Shown: one piece after another, positions 1 to 7,100 of the stretch | Layout of the letters: each line of letters starts with the position of its first letter | Numbering within the stretch: position 1 is the stretch's first letter | Assembly: GCA_020536535.1 (NCBI GenBank) | Contig: JAHLWZ010000828.1 | Coordinates: 1 to 64,000, forward strand | Source: Pelomyxa schiedti | Lineage: Eukaryota; Protista; Evosea | DNA: 64,000 nt | Direction of reading: 5' to 3' | Notes under the pieces: generated by a model | Databases searched by the model: none | Told to the model about the DNA's origin: nothing | The model's input: only the letters and a program-made list of their open reading frames with translations | Translations under genes and position numbers: made by a program

Positions 1-728
1 TTATTTAGGTTATTAATCAAGTTGGCACTATATTTACTCGCATTGATCATTACCCTACCCTTACCCCACTGATGCACAACCCTACCCAACTCCTTCTCCA
101 CCAAAACGGGCCAGGCCTGGCTAATAAACCTGGTGAGACATGACATGGTGACTGCAGGGGCATGCACAGGGCAAAAAAAGATTACAGCACACAGCGCTCC
201 CAGGTAATCCCTTACCCTAGTACTAGCAGTGCTTCAGTTGGTTTATCTTCACTGATCGGACGGGAAGTGGAGTTTACCAACTAATATGGCCGTAACCAAA
301 ACAATTGGTGCCAGCATCGCTTTTGTTCAGCATTTCGTTCTTGATATTTCTTATTTCTGAGAGCCTTTCAAGACACATTGCATAGCCGTAGGTCTGGTGG
401 CTGCCAACGCAGAGGTGCTAAGATCCAACTCAGCAAGTTCCAAAAAAATTTCGAAAAAAAGAGCTTGGAGGTGGTACCTCTTTCAATGTATATCATCAAT
501 GGCTGAGCTAAAATACCCAGAATTACTTCCAAAAGTCACTCCACTTTCTGACAAGGGCCACAGTATTCACATCTATTTTGTGTTGTTGGTCTTAGTGATT
601 TTTTGTCTTATTTAGGTTATTAATCAAGTTGGCACTATATTTACTCGCATTGATCATTACCCTACCCTTACCCCACTGATGCACAACCCTACCCAACTCC
701 TTCTCCACCAAAACGGGCCAGGCCTGGC
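1..728. repeat. Direct repeat 1-121 = 608-728 (period 607 bp); terminal unit of a tandem 5S rDNA array
   Basis: The first 121 nt recur identically at 608-728, and the 5S gene lies between the copies. This fits a 607-bp tandem unit whose previous copy is cut off by the window start. Confidence 0.85.
180..297 (-). rRNA. 5S rRNA: 5S rRNA gene (118 nt), divergent sequence, followed by an oligo-T Pol III terminator
   Basis: Reverse complement reads GGTTACGGCCATATTAGTTGGTAAACTCCACTTCCCGTCCGATCAGTGAAGATAAACCAACTGAAGCACTGCTAGTACTAGGGTAAGGGATTACCTGGGAGCGCTGTGTGCTGTAATC. It keeps the 5S hallmarks ACGGCCATA, CCGATC, TAGTACT (loop E) and CTGGGA...GTGCTGTA; helix I pairs GGUUAC with GUAAUC; T7 follows immediately (173-179). 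Confidence 0.93.
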
Positions 729-930: not shown

Positions 931-3900
931 ATGGCTACACACAATAATCCCGCCTTTAAGAATATATTCCACCTCCACCGACAAGGAGGAGAGAAGGCAT
1001 GCGTTGCCGCCGTGAATGAGTCCATCGCCTCGTGCCCTTCGTGCTCCCCACGTGCCATCCCTACGGAAGCAACAGCGGTTGGACCCCTCGGCTCCACTGT
1101 CGGAGCCACGGCAGACGCCAGTGTTGGCGTAGCCACGGCCGCGGCGTGCTCTCCCCACGACGTTGCACAGCAGCAGCAGCCGCAACAACGGAGGTGCGAG
1201 TGCTGCGCGTGGGTTGTGCGGCCGAGGCGTGCGGATGGCGAGACCATACTGCACGTGGGTGTGCGGGAGGGGTGGGACCCAGCCTCCGTCTCCCTTCTGT
1301 TGCGTGCGGGGGCGCGGCCCAATGCAACGAGGGGTGACGGATGGACGCCTCTGCACACTGCTGTGCTATCTGCCAACTCGCGTTTGGTGGTGTGTATATA
1401 TGTGCGCTTGTAGTTTGTGGACTGCTTTTGGAATTACCTTCTGTTTTTTCCCTTTTGGTGAATTGTTGTATAGCATTGGGCTTTTGCTGTTGTTTGTTGT
1501 TTACTGGTGTCCGAATGTTCCTAGAGTTTGCTTCTTGATGCTGGGGCCAGTGTGACTATACGCAATGCCTGTGGCCTTTCTGCCATTGATTACATAAACG
1601 AGAGCACCCCACCAGATATTGAAGCGCTTCTGAGAGGTGCACCAAGAAAGCAAGTGCCGTCACTTCATTTGTGTGCAAGGAAAGGTGGTGAAACGGCCTG
1701 CCTAGAATTGCTTGCCTCCTTCACAGCATCACAGCTCCACGATAGCGATGAGTCCATAGATATCGAGGAACGCAAAGTGGACGGGGAAACACCACTACAT
1801 GTTGCTGTTACAAATAAGTGGCACACTATGGTACGAAAGCTGCTCGAGTTTGGTGCGAATCCAAACAGTAAAAGGGGGAGTGATGACTGGACACCACTGC
1901 ATATTGCTGCATCCCAAGATGACGTAGTAATGCTAGAAACTTTACTGATTGCCGGCTCTGATCCCAGCATCGAAAATAAGAGAGGAAGGACTGCAGCTAC
2001 TTATATCAGAGAGTCCTCAGAGGCTCAAGCACTGCTCCCTCTCTTGAGTGGGGCACCCTGGGAAGTTCGCAACCAATCACTGATTTTACGACCTGACTTC
2101 AGCCACGGAAGTAATGTTGGTGATCTTGCTTTACATGTTGCACGTGTTACGAGTGGCGTTTTTGCAGTCCCACTGATGCAACTCCCCTTTTGTGCAGCAT
2201 TAACTCGAGCACTCCGAGGAAGAGTTCCGGCCAGTGCTCGATTGGGGTTACCTTTTGAAGGCAGAGAGGTTGACAGTCTCATGCGATGGCTACTTGATCC
2301 CGCACAAACTCAACTTTATCCACTTGCGTGCCACTTGTACCCAGACCTGGTTGGGGGGCGTCCATTGTCTGTAGTCAGCGTATTTGTTGTGTGCTGCTAT
2401 GGCGATGGGGATGTAGAAAATACTCATGGGGGAACTCCTGGAGGAAATCAACCAAGGCACACAGATGACTCTGATATTACTCTGAATGTCTGCATTGAGT
2501 CACAAGACTTGATAGGAGGCGAACTGCTTTTCGATGATGGAGTAACTGCCAACCACCAGCTAGGTTGCTACAATTCCAATTTTCTTTACCGAAATAACAT
2601 CCCGTGCTAGGAACGTGTCTATTCTTCCCTGGAACCTCCAACCACACTGTATTTCCTGTCAGGTAATGTCCATCATATAGAGGTACCAAAAAAACCTTTG
2701 AGTGGAAAAGGTCTGGAAGAAGAACAAATGTTATAGCCTGGCTGAGAGTGACTAAACCAGGATGTTTCGTCAGCGCAAGGCCTAATTTGGACTCTCTTCC
2801 ACTTCCTGTTCTTGTTTATATCCTCTCGTTCATAACTACCCCACGAGAACTTGCCAGATTGTCCATGGTCCGTTTTTCCCAAGCAATAAATTATAGCAAA
2901 CACTAAAATAGGTATGTTGGGCATTAAGAACAGCCAGCATCGAATCAGAACTATGGGAGCCATTTGTGAAAACTGAATTTCCATCAATCTTTTCCTCTGT
3001 GACTGGCTCAGCTAATTGGCACCAGGTTTACCTTCAATGCTGGGAGGGAATATCTGGCTTTGCTGCAGTTATCAAAGGCCCTATAGACTATACCCCGCCT
3101 GTTACTCGTCCGGGCGCAATTGAATGCAAGGTAATCGTTTCTTATTTATTTATTTTGAGCCTCCTAATACTGCAGATCGTTGTGCTTGGAGACACGGGAG
3201 TTGGAAAATCTTCCTTTGTGATTCAGTTTATCCAGGTAACTTTCTTTGTTGGTTTTTCCTTTAACCTCTTGATAGAGTCATTTTATCGATTTTTACGTAT
3301 GCTCCTTTACATCCTGTAGATTATCTGATTTCTTTTCCCTCTTTCATTTTCCATAAAAACTTTTCAGGACGCAGACATTGAAGACTCGTAAGTGCAATTA
3401 ACATTGCTTCCCCTAAACGCATGAGCACCACAACGCACAAAGCGACAAATGCATTAACCCACCACCACAACACACCCAACAGCTACCGAAAGCGAGTTAC
3501 CATAGACGGAATATCAGGGCTACTCGACATACTGGACACAGCCAGTTGGGATGATCCCGAGTCAGACTTCAGTGCGATGCGGGACCAGTACCTCCGTACC
3601 GCGGGAACCCTGGTCCTGGTGTTCGACATCACCAGCCGCCGCTCCTTTGTCTCGCTGGGCCGCTACCTCTCCCGCGCCCTCCACGCCCACGACGACGCCC
3701 CGTGGCTCCCGGGGGTGCTGGTTGGTACCAAGGACGACCTCAGCGACCACCGCGAAGTCCCTGCGGCAATGGCCAGGCAGGCCGCCCACGCCTGGGGCAT
3801 CCCCTACTTCGAGACAAGCGCCAAGACCAGGCACAACGTGGACGAAGCCATGCTGGCTGCTGCCAGGTGCTGGATGAACGGCCCTCCCTCACACCTCAGA

Positions 3901-3969
3901 GCTGCAACTCACGCTTCGTCTGGCAAAGGTAAGAGAAAGCACAAAGGTGAGCAGTGCTCTGTGATGTGA
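931..3969 (+). CDS. Multidomain protein: ankyrin repeats + 2OG-Fe(II) oxygenase + F-box + Ras-family GTPase-like domain + CAAX (about 837 aa, 9 exons)
   Basis: Exons 931-1389, 1525-2563, 2611-2662, 2711-2867, 2912-3130, 3176-3235, 3276-3296, 3368-3387 and 3483-3969 join through GT-AG introns into 2514 nt without stops. Motifs: ankyrin GETPLHVA and WTPLHIA; HTDDSDITLNV...SNH...SGRRTNVIAW (HxD..H..R); F-box LDSLPLPVLVYILSF...LARLSMVCWAL...LW; GDTGVGKS, TKDD, ETSAK; C-terminal CSVM. Confidence 0.85.
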
Positions 3970-4130
3970 GAGGTTCCCATTTGGACACAACTCTTGACTC
4001 ATAGTGTGCTTGTTGTTGACAACAAGCTTTCTTCTTGGAAAACATTTTCGTAATTTAGAAATTCTATCCTATTTGGTTGTGTTTGAATTAGCGTAGTTGC
4101 ACGCTAAGGAACTTTACGGGAGAGACGTCG

Positions 4131-7100
4131 ATGCAACAAGCACCAGGAGGGAGACAGACGGATGGCACGAATGACTCCTCACACGCAGAGGTATTTTTTT
4201 TGTTTGTTGTGGTTGGTGGTGGTGTTGATTTTGGTGGACGCAGGAGGAAGAAGATGCTCCTATGGCGACAACGTCATCGAGTGCAACTGCAACTACAGCA
4301 ACAACGGAGCCTATGATGACGGGTGGATTCGTCAATATAACATCACTACCTTATATTCCGGTTTCCTTTTCTCTTATCTCCTCCCTATAGTTACAGTGGG
4401 TTTTTTTTTTTTTAGGATGAAGAGGATTTGCCATATGAAGAGGATGTTCTCCGTAATCCATATTCATTGAAGAGTTGGTGGAGATTTATTGAATTCAAAC
4501 AACACTGCCCTCCCCGTGTGATCAACCTCACTTTCGAACGTGCTTTGAGGTCATAACCCTTTGTGGGATTGCTCAAAACTGAAACTATCCTAGAGAACTT
4601 CCTGGGAGTTACAAGATTTGGTTTATGTATCTACGCACGCGTGTCCAACAAGTACGCGGTAAATGCATCACAGACAAGGCTTATGACATTGTAAACAACA
4701 CATTTGAACGGGCCCTAGTCTTCATGCACAAGGTAGTTTCCAACAGGCACAGAGCTTAAGGCTGATGTTTTGCCAATAGATGCCCCGAATCTGGGTAGAA
4801 TACATCAAATTTTTAATTGAGCAGAAGAAAATCACACGTACACGTCGAACATGTGATAGAGCACTTCGATCCCTTCCAATCCTCCAGCATACTACAATCT
4901 GGAAGATCTACATCAAGTGGGTGAAAGAGATAAATGTACCTCTGACGATTGTTCGAGTCTATAAACGATATCTAAAGGTAAATTATACCTCACATATAAT
5001 TAAAATATAACTCTTTTTAGCTCGAGCCTGAAAGCGTTGAAGATTACATAGATTATTTAGAACAAGAGGGTTCAGTCTCTGCCAATTAAATATTTCATTA
5101 AGTCTGGCAGGTTTTTTCAATGAAGCTGCTGTCAGGCTTTCGCAAATAGTTGAAGATGATAAGTTTGTGAGCCAAAAAGGAAAATCCAAACATCAAATGT
5201 GGATGCAGCTCTGTGCACTCATTTCCAAACACCCAAAAGAAGTAGCTACCTCACCACATACCAACAATTAACTTGGCTCCAGATAACAAGTCTAAAAGTG
5301 GAGCCTATAATAAGAAATGGAATCAGGAAGTTCACAGATGAAGTGGGGAGGTTGTGGGTCAGTCTTGCTCAGTACTATGTGAGGCTTGCACATTTTGAAA
5401 AGGTCTACATATTCTATTGTATGATGTGGGTTGATCTCGAAAGGCACGAGACATTTTTGAGGAAGGAATGGATTCTGTGACAACTGTTCGTGATTTCAGC
5501 ATGATCTGGGATAGCTACACCAAGTTTGAGGATAGGCTTCTCACAGCTAGAATTAACAGCTCTCCTCAAGAAGTCGGTAGTTCTGCAATGATAAAATAGC
5601 TTGTCTTTCACTAAAATTCTTTGCAGCGGAGGACCCAGAAGACCTTGAAGAAAAAAATGCCGATTTCGAGTTAAGGGTGGCGCGATATGAAAACTTGGTG
5701 GCCAGGCAACCACTTTTGATAAGTGGTGTTCTTTTACGTCAAAACCCGCACAATGTGTATCAATGGCACAAGAGGGCGAAGATATACAAAAGTATGGATA
5801 ACATCAAAAAGGTGTGATGTCATCTTGCAGAATTTGTACATACTCACTTACCACAGATGGTAAAAACGTATTCAAAGGCACTGGCCACTGTTGATCCCCA
5901 AAAAGCGACTGGTAAGCCGCACCTCCTCTGGGCAGCATTTGCACGATTTTATGCCAAACGTGGAGACCATGACTCTGCCTGCACGTAATTTTCCTATTCA
6001 TTGTACCTTACTTCTTACTTGTGAAATTTACAGTATCTTTGAGAAGGGTATTCAACAGAAATTTAAATATGTTGATGACTTAGCTTCTCTGTGTGCTATG
6101 TTTCCATTTTGCGTTGGTCTCTAACATTCCTAGGTGGTGTGATTACATAGAGATGGAGATACGACACCAGTACGAAAATAATCTACTATTTTAAATGCTA
6201 ACTCATTTGTCAGAAACTATGATGTAGCGCGAAAGCTGTGTCAACGAGCCACCACATCACCCCGAAATGCCGCTGTTGCTGTAAAAGTACTGGTTTGTTC
6301 TTCTTTCGTAAACTTATGTCTATGTCTATAGGCTGGCCACGGGACTCAAGATGGTGACAATTCTGTTCACAAGTGGCTGTTCAAGTCCATAAAACTGTGG
6401 CTGCTTTATGCTGATCTCGAAGAAAGTTTTGGTTGTTAAGTATCCAGCCATCCTACACTGACGCACAAAAAATATGTAGGCACTTTTCAGTCAACAAAGG
6501 CTGTATATGAGAAAATTCTGGACCTGCGAATAGCAACACCACAAGTCATTCTCAATTTTGCTGCTTTCCTCGAAGAGCACAAATACTTTGAAGAAGGATT
6601 TAAGGTTGTTCATCTATCTCCTCCAGAAATTTCTTATAGTTTCTGGCCAGGCATTTGAAAGAGGAGTTAATCTATTCCACTTTCCTCACGCACTTCCCAT
6701 TTGGCTTACATACCTTACCAAATTTGTTGAAAGATATGTATGTTAGTGTGTTCCTCCTGTAAAAGAATTCATCCTATAATAAAGAGGGGTCAGAAGCTCG
6801 AGAGAGCCAGAGACTTATTTGAACAAGTTTTAGAGAAAGTACCAGCAAAAGATGCCAAGGTTTCTCTGTTGTTATTTTCAGTTACATGTGTCATAACCAC
6901 CCCTCAGATTTTTTATATCATGTATGCTGCCTTGGAGGAGGAATTTGGATTGGCACGGCACGCCATGGCTGTGTATGACAGGGCTACTAGAGCCGTGCAT
7001 GACGACGACAAGTATAAGGTTAGAGTGCAATCATAGAGATTCCTTTAACACACACCCAGATGTATCTTTTCTACATTGCCCGAGCCGGGGAGTATTTTGG

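What the first reader, a model, noticed from the sequence alone, without database searches (positions are those of the whole stretch)
931..3969. One gene fusing ankyrin repeats, a 2OG-Fe(II) oxygenase, an F-box and a prenylated Ras-like domain
The ORF track shows separate pieces, but nine exons join in frame through canonical introns (2514 nt). Known functions: F-boxes recruit substrates to SCF ligases, 2OG oxygenases hydroxylate proteins in an O2-dependent way (FIH hydroxylates ankyrin repeats; Dictyostelium PhyA hydroxylates Skp1), and CAAX targets membranes. Inference: a membrane-anchored module coupling O2/2OG sensing to ubiquitylation and Ras-type signalling. I know of no described protein with this architecture.
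Basis: partly seen in the sequence, partly recalled or inferred. Interest (0 to 1): 0.8.

Follow-up and report, generated by a model that had tools for sequence, protein, structure and literature searches.

The report
Ankyrin-hydroxylase-F-box-Ras fusion gene, Pelomyxa
The anaerobic amoeba Pelomyxa schiedti transcribes one gene that joins ankyrin repeats, a lysyl-hydroxylase-like oxygen-dependent enzyme, an F-box and a lipid-anchored but degenerate Ras-like domain, a combination I found described nowhere, though each pairing has known parallels.

Summary
Nine exons at 931-3969 (+) join through eight GT-AG introns into a 2514-nt ORF. It is identical to GenBank KAH3756262.1, "hypothetical protein Pelo_11897" of Pelomyxa schiedti (837 aa).

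An independent RNA-seq contig from the P. schiedti single-cell transcriptome (SRR23919877) matches window 1818-4023 at 100%. Its gaps fall exactly at introns 2-8, so one mRNA carries the last ankyrin repeat, the oxygenase, the F-box and the Ras domain. Exon 4 alone holds both the oxygenase end and the F-box start.

Domain support:
- Ankyrin repeats, F-box-like (31 bits, cut-off 24.3) and Ras (5e-39) pass Pfam.
- The oxygenase fails Pfam's cut-off (19.6 against 27 bits). A family profile does hit PKHD and lysyl hydroxylases (8.8e-6 to 4e-4), with HxD...H...R in register. A moderate AlphaFold model matches mimivirus and human lysyl hydroxylases best (Z 16.2 and 14.7).

The Ras-like domain keeps its nucleotide-binding motifs but has lost G12, T35, G60 and Q61. 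It is probably not a working switch, so "Ras-type signalling" is doubtful. The tail (KGKRKHK...CSVM) resembles K-Ras4B.

Kelch-F-box-Ras-CAAX proteins exist in two other amoebozoans. Other notes of this scan, on other DNA of this genome, report Ras-F-box-Vint genes.

Verdict: a real, undescribed four-domain variant of known themes. Its function is inferred only.

The parts
931..3969 (+). Whole coding region, nine exons: 931-1386 (or -1389), 1525-2563, 2611-2662, 2711-2867, 2912-3130, 3176-3235, 3276-3296, 3368-3387, 3483-3969. Product is 836 or 837 aa.
   Evidence: Spliced translation is open. It equals GenBank KAH3756262.1 except for one optional Val at the intron-1 donor. The RNA contig L001 confirms introns 2-8.
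931..1227 (+). N-terminal ~100 aa, low complexity and Cys/Ala/Gln-rich, with no recognised domain. It lies in GC-rich exon 1 and is not covered by the RNA contig.
   Evidence: No Pfam hit before residue 100. GC is 0.64.
1228..1980 (+). Ankyrin-repeat region, at least five repeats (residues ~100-305), interrupted by intron 1 (1387/1390-1524).
   Evidence: On the 837-aa protein: Pfam Ank 2.5e-27, Ank_2 2.7e-24. One repeat (136-167) spans the exon 1/2 junction.
2071..2753 (+). 2OG-Fe(II) oxygenase domain of the lysyl/prolyl-hydroxylase type (residues ~336-531), interrupted by introns 2 and 3. Predicted iron ligands: His at 2458-2460, Asp at 2464-2466, distal His at 2643-2645. Predicted 2OG-binding Arg at 2721-2723.
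   Evidence: Pfam 2OG-FeII_Oxy_3 is only 19.6 bits against a cut-off of 27. Family profile against PDB: 3dkq 8.8e-6, L230 2.3e-4, LH3 4.2e-4, with HxD, His and Arg in register. hhalign against PKHD hydroxylases gives 95.9%. AlphaFold model pLDDT 59.6; VIA-align Z 16.2 to 6ax6 and 14.7 to LH3.
2711..2867 (+). Exon 4: a single uninterrupted coding stretch that holds both the end of the oxygenase (SGRRTNVIAWL) and the start of the F-box (LDSLPLPVLVYIL).
   Evidence: Read directly from the sequence. The F-box-like hit starts inside this exon.
2787..2959 (+). F-box (residues 543-585), interrupted by intron 4 (2868-2911).
   Evidence: Pfam F-box-like 1.6e-7 to 2.2e-8, 31-34 bits, against a cut-off of 24.3.
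3128..3867 (+). Ras-family G domain (residues 642-804), split by introns 5-8 and including two micro-exons of 21 and 20 nt. G1 is GDTGVGKS, switch I is YDADIEDSY, G3 is DTAS followed by W and a 4-aa insertion, G4 is TKDD, G5 is SAK.
   Evidence: Pfam Ras 5e-39. Best PDB sequence matches are K-Ras, H-Ras and RalB at about 1e-24. Motifs were read against a canonical amoebozoan Ras.
3925..3966 (+). Membrane-targeting tail: polybasic KGKRKHK (3925-3945) and CAAX box CSVM (3955-3966). Stop codon at 3967-3969.
   Evidence: Read directly from the sequence. The RNA contig runs through it to 4023.
3970..4023 (+). At least 54 nt of 3' untranslated region.
   Evidence: L001 aligns up to window position 4023.

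Best explanation
Shown: this is one transcribed P. schiedti gene (Pelo_11897). Its 837-aa product carries, in order: a low-complexity head; at least five ankyrin repeats; a 2OG-Fe(II) oxygenase with the full HxD...H...R site; an F-box; a ~55-aa linker; a Ras-family G domain; and a K-Ras4B-like polybasic-plus-CSVM tail. The oxygenase is most like lysyl hydroxylases.

Inferred: the tail is farnesylated and holds the protein on the inner face of a membrane. The F-box docks Skp1, so a Skp1/cullin complex is assembled at that membrane. The ankyrin repeats act as the partner-binding surface and present a bound protein to the adjacent hydroxylase. The hydroxylase needs O2 and 2OG, which makes the output oxygen-dependent in an organism that lives without oxygen.

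The G domain probably still binds guanine nucleotide, because G1, D57, [N/T]KxD and SAK are kept. It cannot hydrolyse GTP or sense the gamma-phosphate in the canonical way, because G12, T35, G60 and Q61 are all replaced. It therefore acts as a fixed membrane-proximal scaffold or interaction module, like RhoBTB or Rab40 within cullin ligases, and not as an on/off Ras switch.
For: Single gene and mRNA: plus exon 4 holding two domain borders. Ankyrin, F-box and Ras all pass Pfam's cut-offs. Oxygenase: invariant H, D, H and R across the four family members; the profile hits only PKHD and lysyl hydroxylases, and the HTDDSDxTLNV motif lies in register with HHDSSTFTLNV of LH3; hhalign gives 95.9%; best fold matches are L230 (Z 16.2, rmsd 2.6 over 167 residues) and LH3 (Z 14.7). 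G-domain substitutions were read against a canonical Ras and are confirmed by RNA at 100% identity. Precedents from papers: JcdI is an O2-dependent dioxygenase that binds Skp1 through its F-box (PMC9485057); GTPases occur inside cullin ligases (PMC13236570) and fused to F-box or BTB (PMC8358228); AnkB is an F-box-ankyrin protein that works at a membrane through CaaX farnesylation (PMC7830128). From established knowledge: a CAAX box ending in Met is a farnesyltransferase substrate, and a polybasic stretch plus farnesyl targets K-Ras4B to the plasma membrane.
Against: No biochemical step has been tested. The oxygenase fails Pfam's own cut-off. Its structure model is only moderate (pLDDT 59.6) and was built with PKHD sequences in the alignment, so it is partly circular; a first model from three sequences failed (pLDDT 30.6). 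Substrate, residue specificity (Lys, Pro or other) and the role of the ankyrin repeats are unknown. In JcdI the F-box was not needed for the O2 phenotype, so an F-box does not prove a substrate-receptor role. The oxygenase domain has only three detectable relatives among billions of proteins, so conservation of the whole architecture cannot be shown.
Confidence: 0.55

Rival explanations
1. The JcdI-like reading. The protein is mainly a membrane-bound protein hydroxylase. The F-box serves to tie it to Skp1 so that its own level or solubility is controlled (autoubiquitylation or chaperoning), and it does not recruit substrates for ubiquitylation.
For: In Dictyostelium JcdI, the F-box mediates Skp1 binding and lowers JcdI levels, but it is dispensable for the O2-sensing phenotype, which depends on catalytic activity (PMC9485057). 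Here the F-box sits between two non-classical partner domains and is not followed by WD40 or LRR repeats.
Against: Ankyrin repeats are an accepted substrate-receptor type in F-box proteins (PMC9485057). The Kelch-F-box-Ras relatives carry a classical receptor propeller in the same position.
Confidence: 0.25
2. The Ras-like domain is a working nucleotide switch that gates the ligase or hydroxylase, or signals to Ras effectors.
For: The P-loop, D57, TKDD and SAK are kept, and most of the effector loop (IEDSY) is intact. The Nematostelium relative P0047 keeps canonical T35, DTAGQ and NKxD.
Against: G12 is Thr, T35 is Asp, G60 is Ser and Q61 is Trp, with a 4-aa insertion in switch II. These are the residues that sense the gamma-phosphate and catalyse hydrolysis (established Ras biochemistry).
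Confidence: 0.15
3. The oxygenase-like segment is a catalytically dead scaffold, and the protein is simply an ankyrin-type F-box protein with a lipid anchor.
For: The domain is below Pfam's cut-off and very divergent: only three relatives were found among 1.84 billion cluster representatives and 5.8 billion sequences.
Against: All four catalytic positions are invariant across the family and align with those of LH3, L230 and PKHD enzymes.
Confidence: 0.08
4. An annotation or assembly artefact: two or more neighbouring genes wrongly joined.
For: The genome comes from single-cell amplified DNA (PMC8887013), a method that can produce chimeras. Exon 1 and exon 9 are much more GC-rich than the middle exons.
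Against: The independent RNA contig spans exons 2-9 with exact junctions. Exon 4 holds two domain borders in one open frame. The GC shift falls inside the Ras domain, not at a domain border.
Confidence: 0.02

Closest known systems
Dictyostelium JcdI / Fbxo13 (and, from my own knowledge, human KDM2A/FBXL11 and KDM2B/FBXL10)
   Same: A non-haem 2OG dioxygenase and an F-box in one polypeptide. JcdI is amoebozoan, binds Skp1 and has a physiological O2 dependence (PMC9485057).
   Different: Those enzymes are JmjC-type (JMJD6- or KDM2-like), whereas this one is of the lysyl/prolyl-hydroxylase (PKHD/PLOD) type. None of them has ankyrin repeats, a Ras domain or a CAAX anchor.
Kelch-F-box-Ras-CAAX proteins of Nematostelium gracile (P0047) and Luapeleamoeba hula (P0107), uncharacterised transcriptome products
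   Same: The same C-terminal half in the same order: F-box, linker, Ras-family domain, and a terminal Cys-x-x-x (CITN, CLLA). All are Amoebozoa.
   Different: A Kelch propeller replaces the ankyrin repeats plus oxygenase. Their G domains are much closer to canonical Ras. Common origin of the fusion is neither shown nor rejected (AU test p = 0.44). Similarity outside the Ras domain is limited to the F-box itself for P0047 and is absent for P0107.
RhoBTB and Rab40 (small GTPase fused to a cullin-adaptor box), and ARF-family GTPases fused to F-box or BTB
   Same: A small G domain built into a cullin-RING ligase adaptor (PMC13236570, PMC8358228). From my own knowledge: RhoBTB G domains are atypical and non-cycling, and Rab40 is prenylated.
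   Different: Different GTPase families (Rho, Rab, Arf) and different adaptor boxes (BTB for Cul3, SOCS for Cul5). None carries an oxygenase.
Procollagen lysyl hydroxylases (human LH3/PLOD3 C-terminal domain; mimivirus L230)
   Same: These are the best structural matches and significant profile matches for the oxygenase domain. The HxD-S-x-x-T-L-N-V strand, distal His, Arg and an N-terminal P-L-L-S-x-x-x-C motif are all aligned.
   Different: About 20% identity. There is no glycosyltransferase domain, no collagen context and no secretory signal was seen. Substrate specificity is untested.
K-Ras4B
   Same: Best sequence matches of the G domain (about 1e-24). A polybasic stretch followed by a CAAX box ending in Met.
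   Different: G12T, T35D, G60S, Q61W and a 4-aa switch II insertion. It sits at the end of an 837-aa multidomain protein.
Legionella pneumophila AnkB
   Same: F-box plus ankyrin repeats plus a C-terminal CaaX farnesylation motif. It recruits SCF to a membrane (PMC7830128).
   Different: It is a bacterial injected effector of about 170 aa with no oxygenase and no G domain. The resemblance is in architecture only; no sequence relationship was tested.
Ras-F-box-Vint genes of the same genome
   Same: Ras-like domain plus F-box in P. schiedti, said to number at least 14 genes.
   Different: The order is reversed (Ras before the F-box), with a Hint/Vint domain instead of ankyrin repeats plus oxygenase. 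I did not check these genes.

Membership tests
F-box proteins | F-box motif recognised by the family HMM above the curated cut-off | tested here: met
   PF12937 F-box-like scores 31.4 bits (34.2 on the excised region) against a cut-off of 24.3, at residues 543-585.
F-box proteins | Binds Skp1 | not testable with these tools
   Needs a pull-down or co-expression.
Ras family small GTPases | G-domain fold and family HMM | tested here: met
   PF00071 at 5e-39, covering profile positions 1-158 of 162. K-Ras, H-Ras and RalB score about 1e-24.
Ras family small GTPases | Nucleotide-binding motifs G1 GxxxxGK[ST], G4 [NT]KxD and G5 SAK | tested here: met
   GDTGVGKS, TKDD and SAK are present.
Ras family small GTPases | Switch and catalytic residues: G12, T35 (G2), DxxG (G3) and Q61 | tested here: not met
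   The residues are T, D, DTAS and W respectively, plus a 4-aa insertion. No DxxG motif was found in the domain.
Ras family small GTPases | C-terminal CAAX prenylation box | tested here: met
   The protein ends in CSVM, preceded by KGKRKHK. Prenylation itself was not tested.
2OG-Fe(II) oxygenases (PKHD / prolyl- and lysyl-hydroxylase-like) | Family HMM above the curated cut-off | tested here: not met
   PF13640 scores 19.6 bits at E 0.0018 against a cut-off of 27. There was no hit on the exon-2 piece alone.
2OG-Fe(II) oxygenases (PKHD / prolyl- and lysyl-hydroxylase-like) | HxD...H iron triad and the Arg that binds the 2OG C5 carboxylate | tested here: met
   These positions are invariant in all four family members. 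They align with the corresponding residues of L230, LH3 and 3dkq.
2OG-Fe(II) oxygenases (PKHD / prolyl- and lysyl-hydroxylase-like) | Double-stranded beta-helix fold | tested here: inconclusive
   The model has pLDDT 59.6 and pTM 0.63, and PKHD sequences were in its alignment. All top fold matches are 2OG oxygenases: Z 16.2 for L230, 14.7 for LH3, about 13 for Tpa1, OGFOD1 and PHD2. This is supportive but not independent.
Procollagen lysyl hydroxylases (PLOD/LH) | Hydroxylates peptidyl lysine | not testable with these tools
   Only profile similarity at the 1e-4 level and fold similarity are available.
Ankyrin-repeat proteins | Tandem 33-residue repeats recognised by family HMMs | tested here: met
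   Ank 2.5e-27, Ank_2 2.7e-24.
OGFOD2-like oxygenases | N-terminal OGFOD2-like domain (PF25238) | tested here: not met
   Only the relative P0123 gave a weak hit (E 0.019, 15.4 bits against a cut-off of 31). The window protein and P0124 gave none.

The most novel reading that the evidence does not exclude
This is an oxygen-gated ubiquitin-ligase adaptor at the plasma membrane of an anaerobe. When O2 enters, the built-in lysyl-hydroxylase-like domain hydroxylates a protein held by the ankyrin repeats, or a component of its own Skp1/cullin complex. That either creates or blocks a ubiquitylation site, since lysine is the residue that both reactions use. One polypeptide would then turn O2 exposure directly into local protein turnover. 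It would be a convergent, self-contained counterpart of the PHD-VHL and PhyA-Skp1 oxygen sensors, with a fossil Ras domain serving as the membrane platform.
Probability: 0.12. Interest if true: 0.8.

Novelty: new variant of a known kind. Interest (0 to 1): 0.55.

Why it matters
Oxygen sensing through protein hydroxylases coupled to cullin ligases is known in two forms. In animals, PHD marks HIF for VHL. In Dictyostelium and Toxoplasma, PhyA modifies Skp1, and JcdI is itself an F-box protein. In all of these the hydroxylase and the ligase adaptor are either separate proteins or involve a JmjC enzyme.

Here a prolyl/lysyl-hydroxylase-type enzyme is fused to an F-box and tied to a membrane, in a free-living anaerobe that hosts methanogenic archaeal endosymbionts. 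It is a compact candidate for how such a cell detects intruding oxygen.

It also adds to evidence that Amoebozoa repeatedly wire Ras-family domains into F-box proteins. Examples are the Kelch-F-box-Ras proteins in Nematostelium and Luapeleamoeba, and the Ras-F-box-Vint genes reported elsewhere in this genome. That suggests an undescribed class of GTPase-containing SCF adaptors alongside RhoBTB (Cul3) and Rab40 (Cul5).

The oxygenase domain belongs to a tiny orphan family with three other members, all from uncultured or unidentified eukaryote-like sequence.

Tried and rejected
- Pfam, NCBIfam and PDB sequence searches on the exon-2 part of the oxygenase alone found nothing. The domain became visible only with the spliced protein and a family profile.
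- The first AlphaFold run, on a 3-sequence alignment, failed (pLDDT 30.6).
- phmmer of the oxygenase part against 1.84 billion cluster representatives found only the protein itself and one relative. Two further searches added only two more relatives.
- The OGFOD2 lead rested on one weak hit in one relative and was not reproduced in the other members. I dropped it.
- The contig of relative P0002 ends 180 nt after a real stop codon, with no F-box following, so it says nothing about a wider fusion.
- The Ras-domain tree of 98 sequences left the three F-box-linked domains on long unresolved branches. The AU test does not reject a single clade (p = 0.44) but does not show one either.
- Outside the Ras domain, the window protein resembles P0047 only in the F-box itself, and P0107 not at all.
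- There is no paralogue of the gene elsewhere in the window.
- Literature searches for F-box plus Ras or for this architecture found no description of it.
- The full spliced protein was never typed in. All work used window pieces, the RNA-derived P0001 or the GenBank product P0003.
Full report
**What is in the sequence**

The window is intron-rich eukaryotic DNA. Starting from the ATG at 931, nine exons join through eight GT-AG introns of 40-138 nt, less GC-rich than most of the exons beside them, to give an open frame that ends at 3969. The exons are 931-1386/1389, 1525-2563, 2611-2662, 2711-2867, 2912-3130, 3176-3235, 3276-3296, 3368-3387 and 3483-3969.

Two in-frame donors are possible for intron 1, at 1387 and 1390.

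**Identity and transcript evidence**

A whole-library phmmer search with the exon-2 part of the putative oxygenase returned a 583-aa protein at 100% identity (P0001). Its 90% cluster also holds KAH3756262.1, "hypothetical protein Pelo_11897 [Pelomyxa schiedti]", 837 aa (P0003). That record equals my spliced model apart from the optional Val at the intron-1 donor.

P0001 is encoded without interruption on a 1816-nt Logan contig of run SRR23919877 (L001). That contig aligns at 100% identity to window 1818-4023, with gaps exactly at introns 2-8. Its reading frame is open to its 5' end, so it is a 5'-truncated copy of a longer message.

SRR23919866-77 are the single-cell transcriptome runs of P. 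schiedti (PMC10579272). The contig is therefore spliced RNA from a data set independent of the genome assembly.

So are two micro-exons of 21 and 20 nt inside the Ras domain.

Exon 4 (2711-2867) is one uninterrupted coding stretch that holds both the last oxygenase motif and the start of the F-box. That border needs no splicing at all.

A complete ankyrin repeat spans that junction, however (Pfam Ank, residues 136-167). Eight introns is ordinary for this genome, which averages 7.4 per gene, 98% of them GT-AG (PMC8887013).

**Domains that pass the family tests**

On the full protein:
- Ankyrin repeats cover about residues 100-305 (Ank 2.5e-27).
- F-box-like covers 543-585 (31-34 bits against a cut-off of 24.3).
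- Ras covers 642-804 (5e-39, nearly the whole profile). The best solved relatives are K-Ras, H-Ras and RalB, at about 1e-24.
- The protein ends KGKRKHKGEQ-CSVM: a polybasic stretch plus a CAAX box ending in Met. By established knowledge this is the K-Ras4B type of farnesyl-plus-charge plasma-membrane signal.

**The oxygenase**

This was the weak point. Pieces of exon 2 gave no hit in Pfam, NCBIfam or PDB sequence searches. On the spliced protein, 2OG-FeII_Oxy_3 reaches only 19.6 bits against a cut-off of 27.

The domain has very few relatives:
- P0002, 349 aa, on an ENA metagenome contig.
- P0123, 236 aa, from JGI.
- P0124, 235 aa, on a Logan contig whose neighbours (DnaJ-PHD and Kelch genes) look eukaryotic.

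All four sequences share an invariant H-x-D, a distal His and an Arg in a G-[RKE]-R motif (GRR, GKR or GER).

A profile of the family hits, in the PDB, only 2OG oxygenases below E = 0.01:
- PKHD-type hydroxylase 3dkq at 8.8e-6.
- Mimivirus lysyl hydroxylase L230 at 2.3e-4.
- Human LH3 at 4.2e-4.
- PiuC at about 4e-4.

In the LH3 and L230 alignments the family's H-T-D-D-S-D-x-T-L-N-V lies in register with H-H-D-S-S-T-F/Y-T-L-N-V/I. The distal His and the Arg also align. The LH3 alignment extends to an N-terminal P-L-L-S-x-x-x-C motif.

Other supporting results:
- Profile-profile comparison with bacterial PKHD hydroxylases gives 95.9% probability.
- All weak hits in the 5.8-billion-sequence search are PKHD hydroxylases.
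- An AlphaFold model from three sequences failed (pLDDT 30.6).
- A model from ten rows including five PKHD sequences reached pLDDT 59.6 and pTM 0.63.
- Its best matches are lysyl hydroxylases, which were not in the alignment. Foldseek gives TM 0.58-0.70 to L230. VIA-align gives Z 16.2 (rmsd 2.6 over 167 residues) to L230 and 14.7 to LH3, followed by Tpa1, OGFOD1 and PHD2 at about 13.

I conclude that this is a divergent 2OG-Fe(II) oxygenase with a complete active site, of the prolyl/lysyl-hydroxylase class and nearest to lysyl hydroxylases. The model is moderate and partly circular, so I rate the fold test as supportive and not decisive.

**The Ras-like domain is not a normal switch**

I compared it with a canonical amoebozoan Ras. 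The domain keeps G1 (GDTGVGKS), D57, G4 (TKDD, within the [N/T]KxD consensus) and G5 (SAK). The following are changed:
- Position 12 is Thr.
- T35 is Asp.
- G60 is Ser.
- Q61 is Trp.
- Four residues are inserted in switch II.

By established Ras biochemistry, these are the residues that sense the gamma-phosphate and catalyse hydrolysis. The RNA contig carries the same sequence, so they are not genome errors.

The likely state is nucleotide-bound but non-cycling, as in atypical GTPases.

**Relatives of the architecture**

A search restricted to the F-box-plus-Ras half found two proteins that cover it almost end to end:
- P0047 from Nematostelium gracile (Variosea).
- P0107 from Luapeleamoeba hula (Acanthamoebidae).

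Both read Kelch propeller, F-box, linker, Ras, terminal Cys-x-x-x (CITN, CLLA).

F-box-Ras-CAAX is therefore a recurring amoebozoan module with an exchangeable N-terminal part. Whether the three fusions share one origin is open:
- The Ras tree leaves them on long unresolved branches.
- An AU test does not reject a clade (p = 0.44).
- Outside the Ras domain, similarity is limited to the F-box.

Other notes of this scan, on other DNA of the same genome, report a family of Ras-F-box-Vint genes. I did not check them.

**How it most likely works**

Shown: one mRNA, the domain order, intact oxygenase site residues, degenerate switch residues, and the tail.

Inferred:
- Farnesylation and the polybasic patch hold the C-terminus at a membrane.
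- The F-box binds Skp1 and brings a cullin complex there.
- The ankyrin repeats bind a partner that the neighbouring hydroxylase modifies in an O2- and 2OG-dependent way, and that the ligase may ubiquitylate.
- The G domain is a fixed platform.

Precedents:
- JcdI, an amoebozoan O2-dependent dioxygenase that is an F-box protein (PMC9485057).
- GTPases inside cullin ligases and fused to F-box or BTB (PMC13236570, PMC8358228).
- AnkB, an F-box-ankyrin protein that must be farnesylated to act at a membrane (PMC7830128).

The main rival is the JcdI-like reading, in which the F-box regulates the enzyme itself and does not recruit substrates. I cannot separate the two readings by computation.

**Novelty**

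The gene is already in GenBank as a hypothetical protein. I found no paper describing it or this domain set. Each pairing has a known parallel, so I class it as a new variant of known kinds. The interest lies in an O2-dependent hydroxylase fused to a ligase adaptor in an anaerobe, and in the emerging group of Ras-containing F-box proteins in Amoebozoa.

**Surroundings**

- Upstream lies a 5S rRNA gene (179-297, minus strand, 91.5 bits). It sits inside a 607-nt repeat unit whose first 121 nt recur at 608-728 and end in a 24-nt palindrome.
- Downstream, from about 4428, is a SYF1 splicing-factor gene.

Noticed in passing
window 179-297 (- strand); repeats at 1-121 and 608-728; palindrome arms at 705-728 and 717-740: A 5S rRNA gene (Rfam RF00001, 91.5 bits) lies just upstream of the gene. 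It sits inside a 607-nt unit whose first 121 nt are repeated exactly. The second copy ends in a perfect 24-nt inverted repeat (CCACCAAAACGGGCCAGGCCTGGC). This looks like the edge of a 5S rDNA tandem array.
   Followed up: partly
window 931-1386 and 3483-3969 compared with 1525-3387: Exon 1 (GC 0.64) and exon 9 (GC 0.62) are far more GC-rich than exons 2-8 (0.24-0.50). The shift falls inside the Ras domain and not at a domain border. It is unexplained.
   Followed up: no
window 3276-3296 and 3368-3387: Two micro-exons of 21 and 20 nt encode SHFIDFY and DADIEDS(-), which together form switch I of the Ras domain. Both are confirmed by the RNA contig.
   Followed up: yes
window ~4428-5480 (+), probably extending further: The neighbouring gene is a SYF1/XAB2-type pre-mRNA splicing factor (HAT_Syf1 N-terminal domain at 1.9e-26 and middle domain at 4.1e-14), also with short introns.
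   Followed up: partly
P0002 (L002 6001-7050), P0123, P0124 (L003 6001-6708): A tiny orphan family of lysyl-hydroxylase-like 2OG oxygenases with the motif H-x-D-D-[SG]-D-x-T-[LI]-N. It is known only from metagenome or read-archive contigs; L003 carries eukaryote-type neighbours. The organisms were not identified.
   Followed up: partly
P0047 (Nematostelium gracile), P0107 (Luapeleamoeba hula): Kelch-F-box-Ras proteins ending in Cys-x-x-x occur in two distant amoebozoans. With the Pelomyxa gene they suggest an undescribed group of lipid-anchored, GTPase-containing F-box proteins.
   Followed up: partly
one search hit list (P0017, P0021, P0022 and dictyostelid, Physarum and Anaeramoeba entries): Many long amoebozoan proteins join a Ras domain to vWA or Sec23/24-trunk domains, including three from P. 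schiedti annotated 'Ras GTPase'. Multidomain Ras proteins appear to be common in this group.
   Followed up: no
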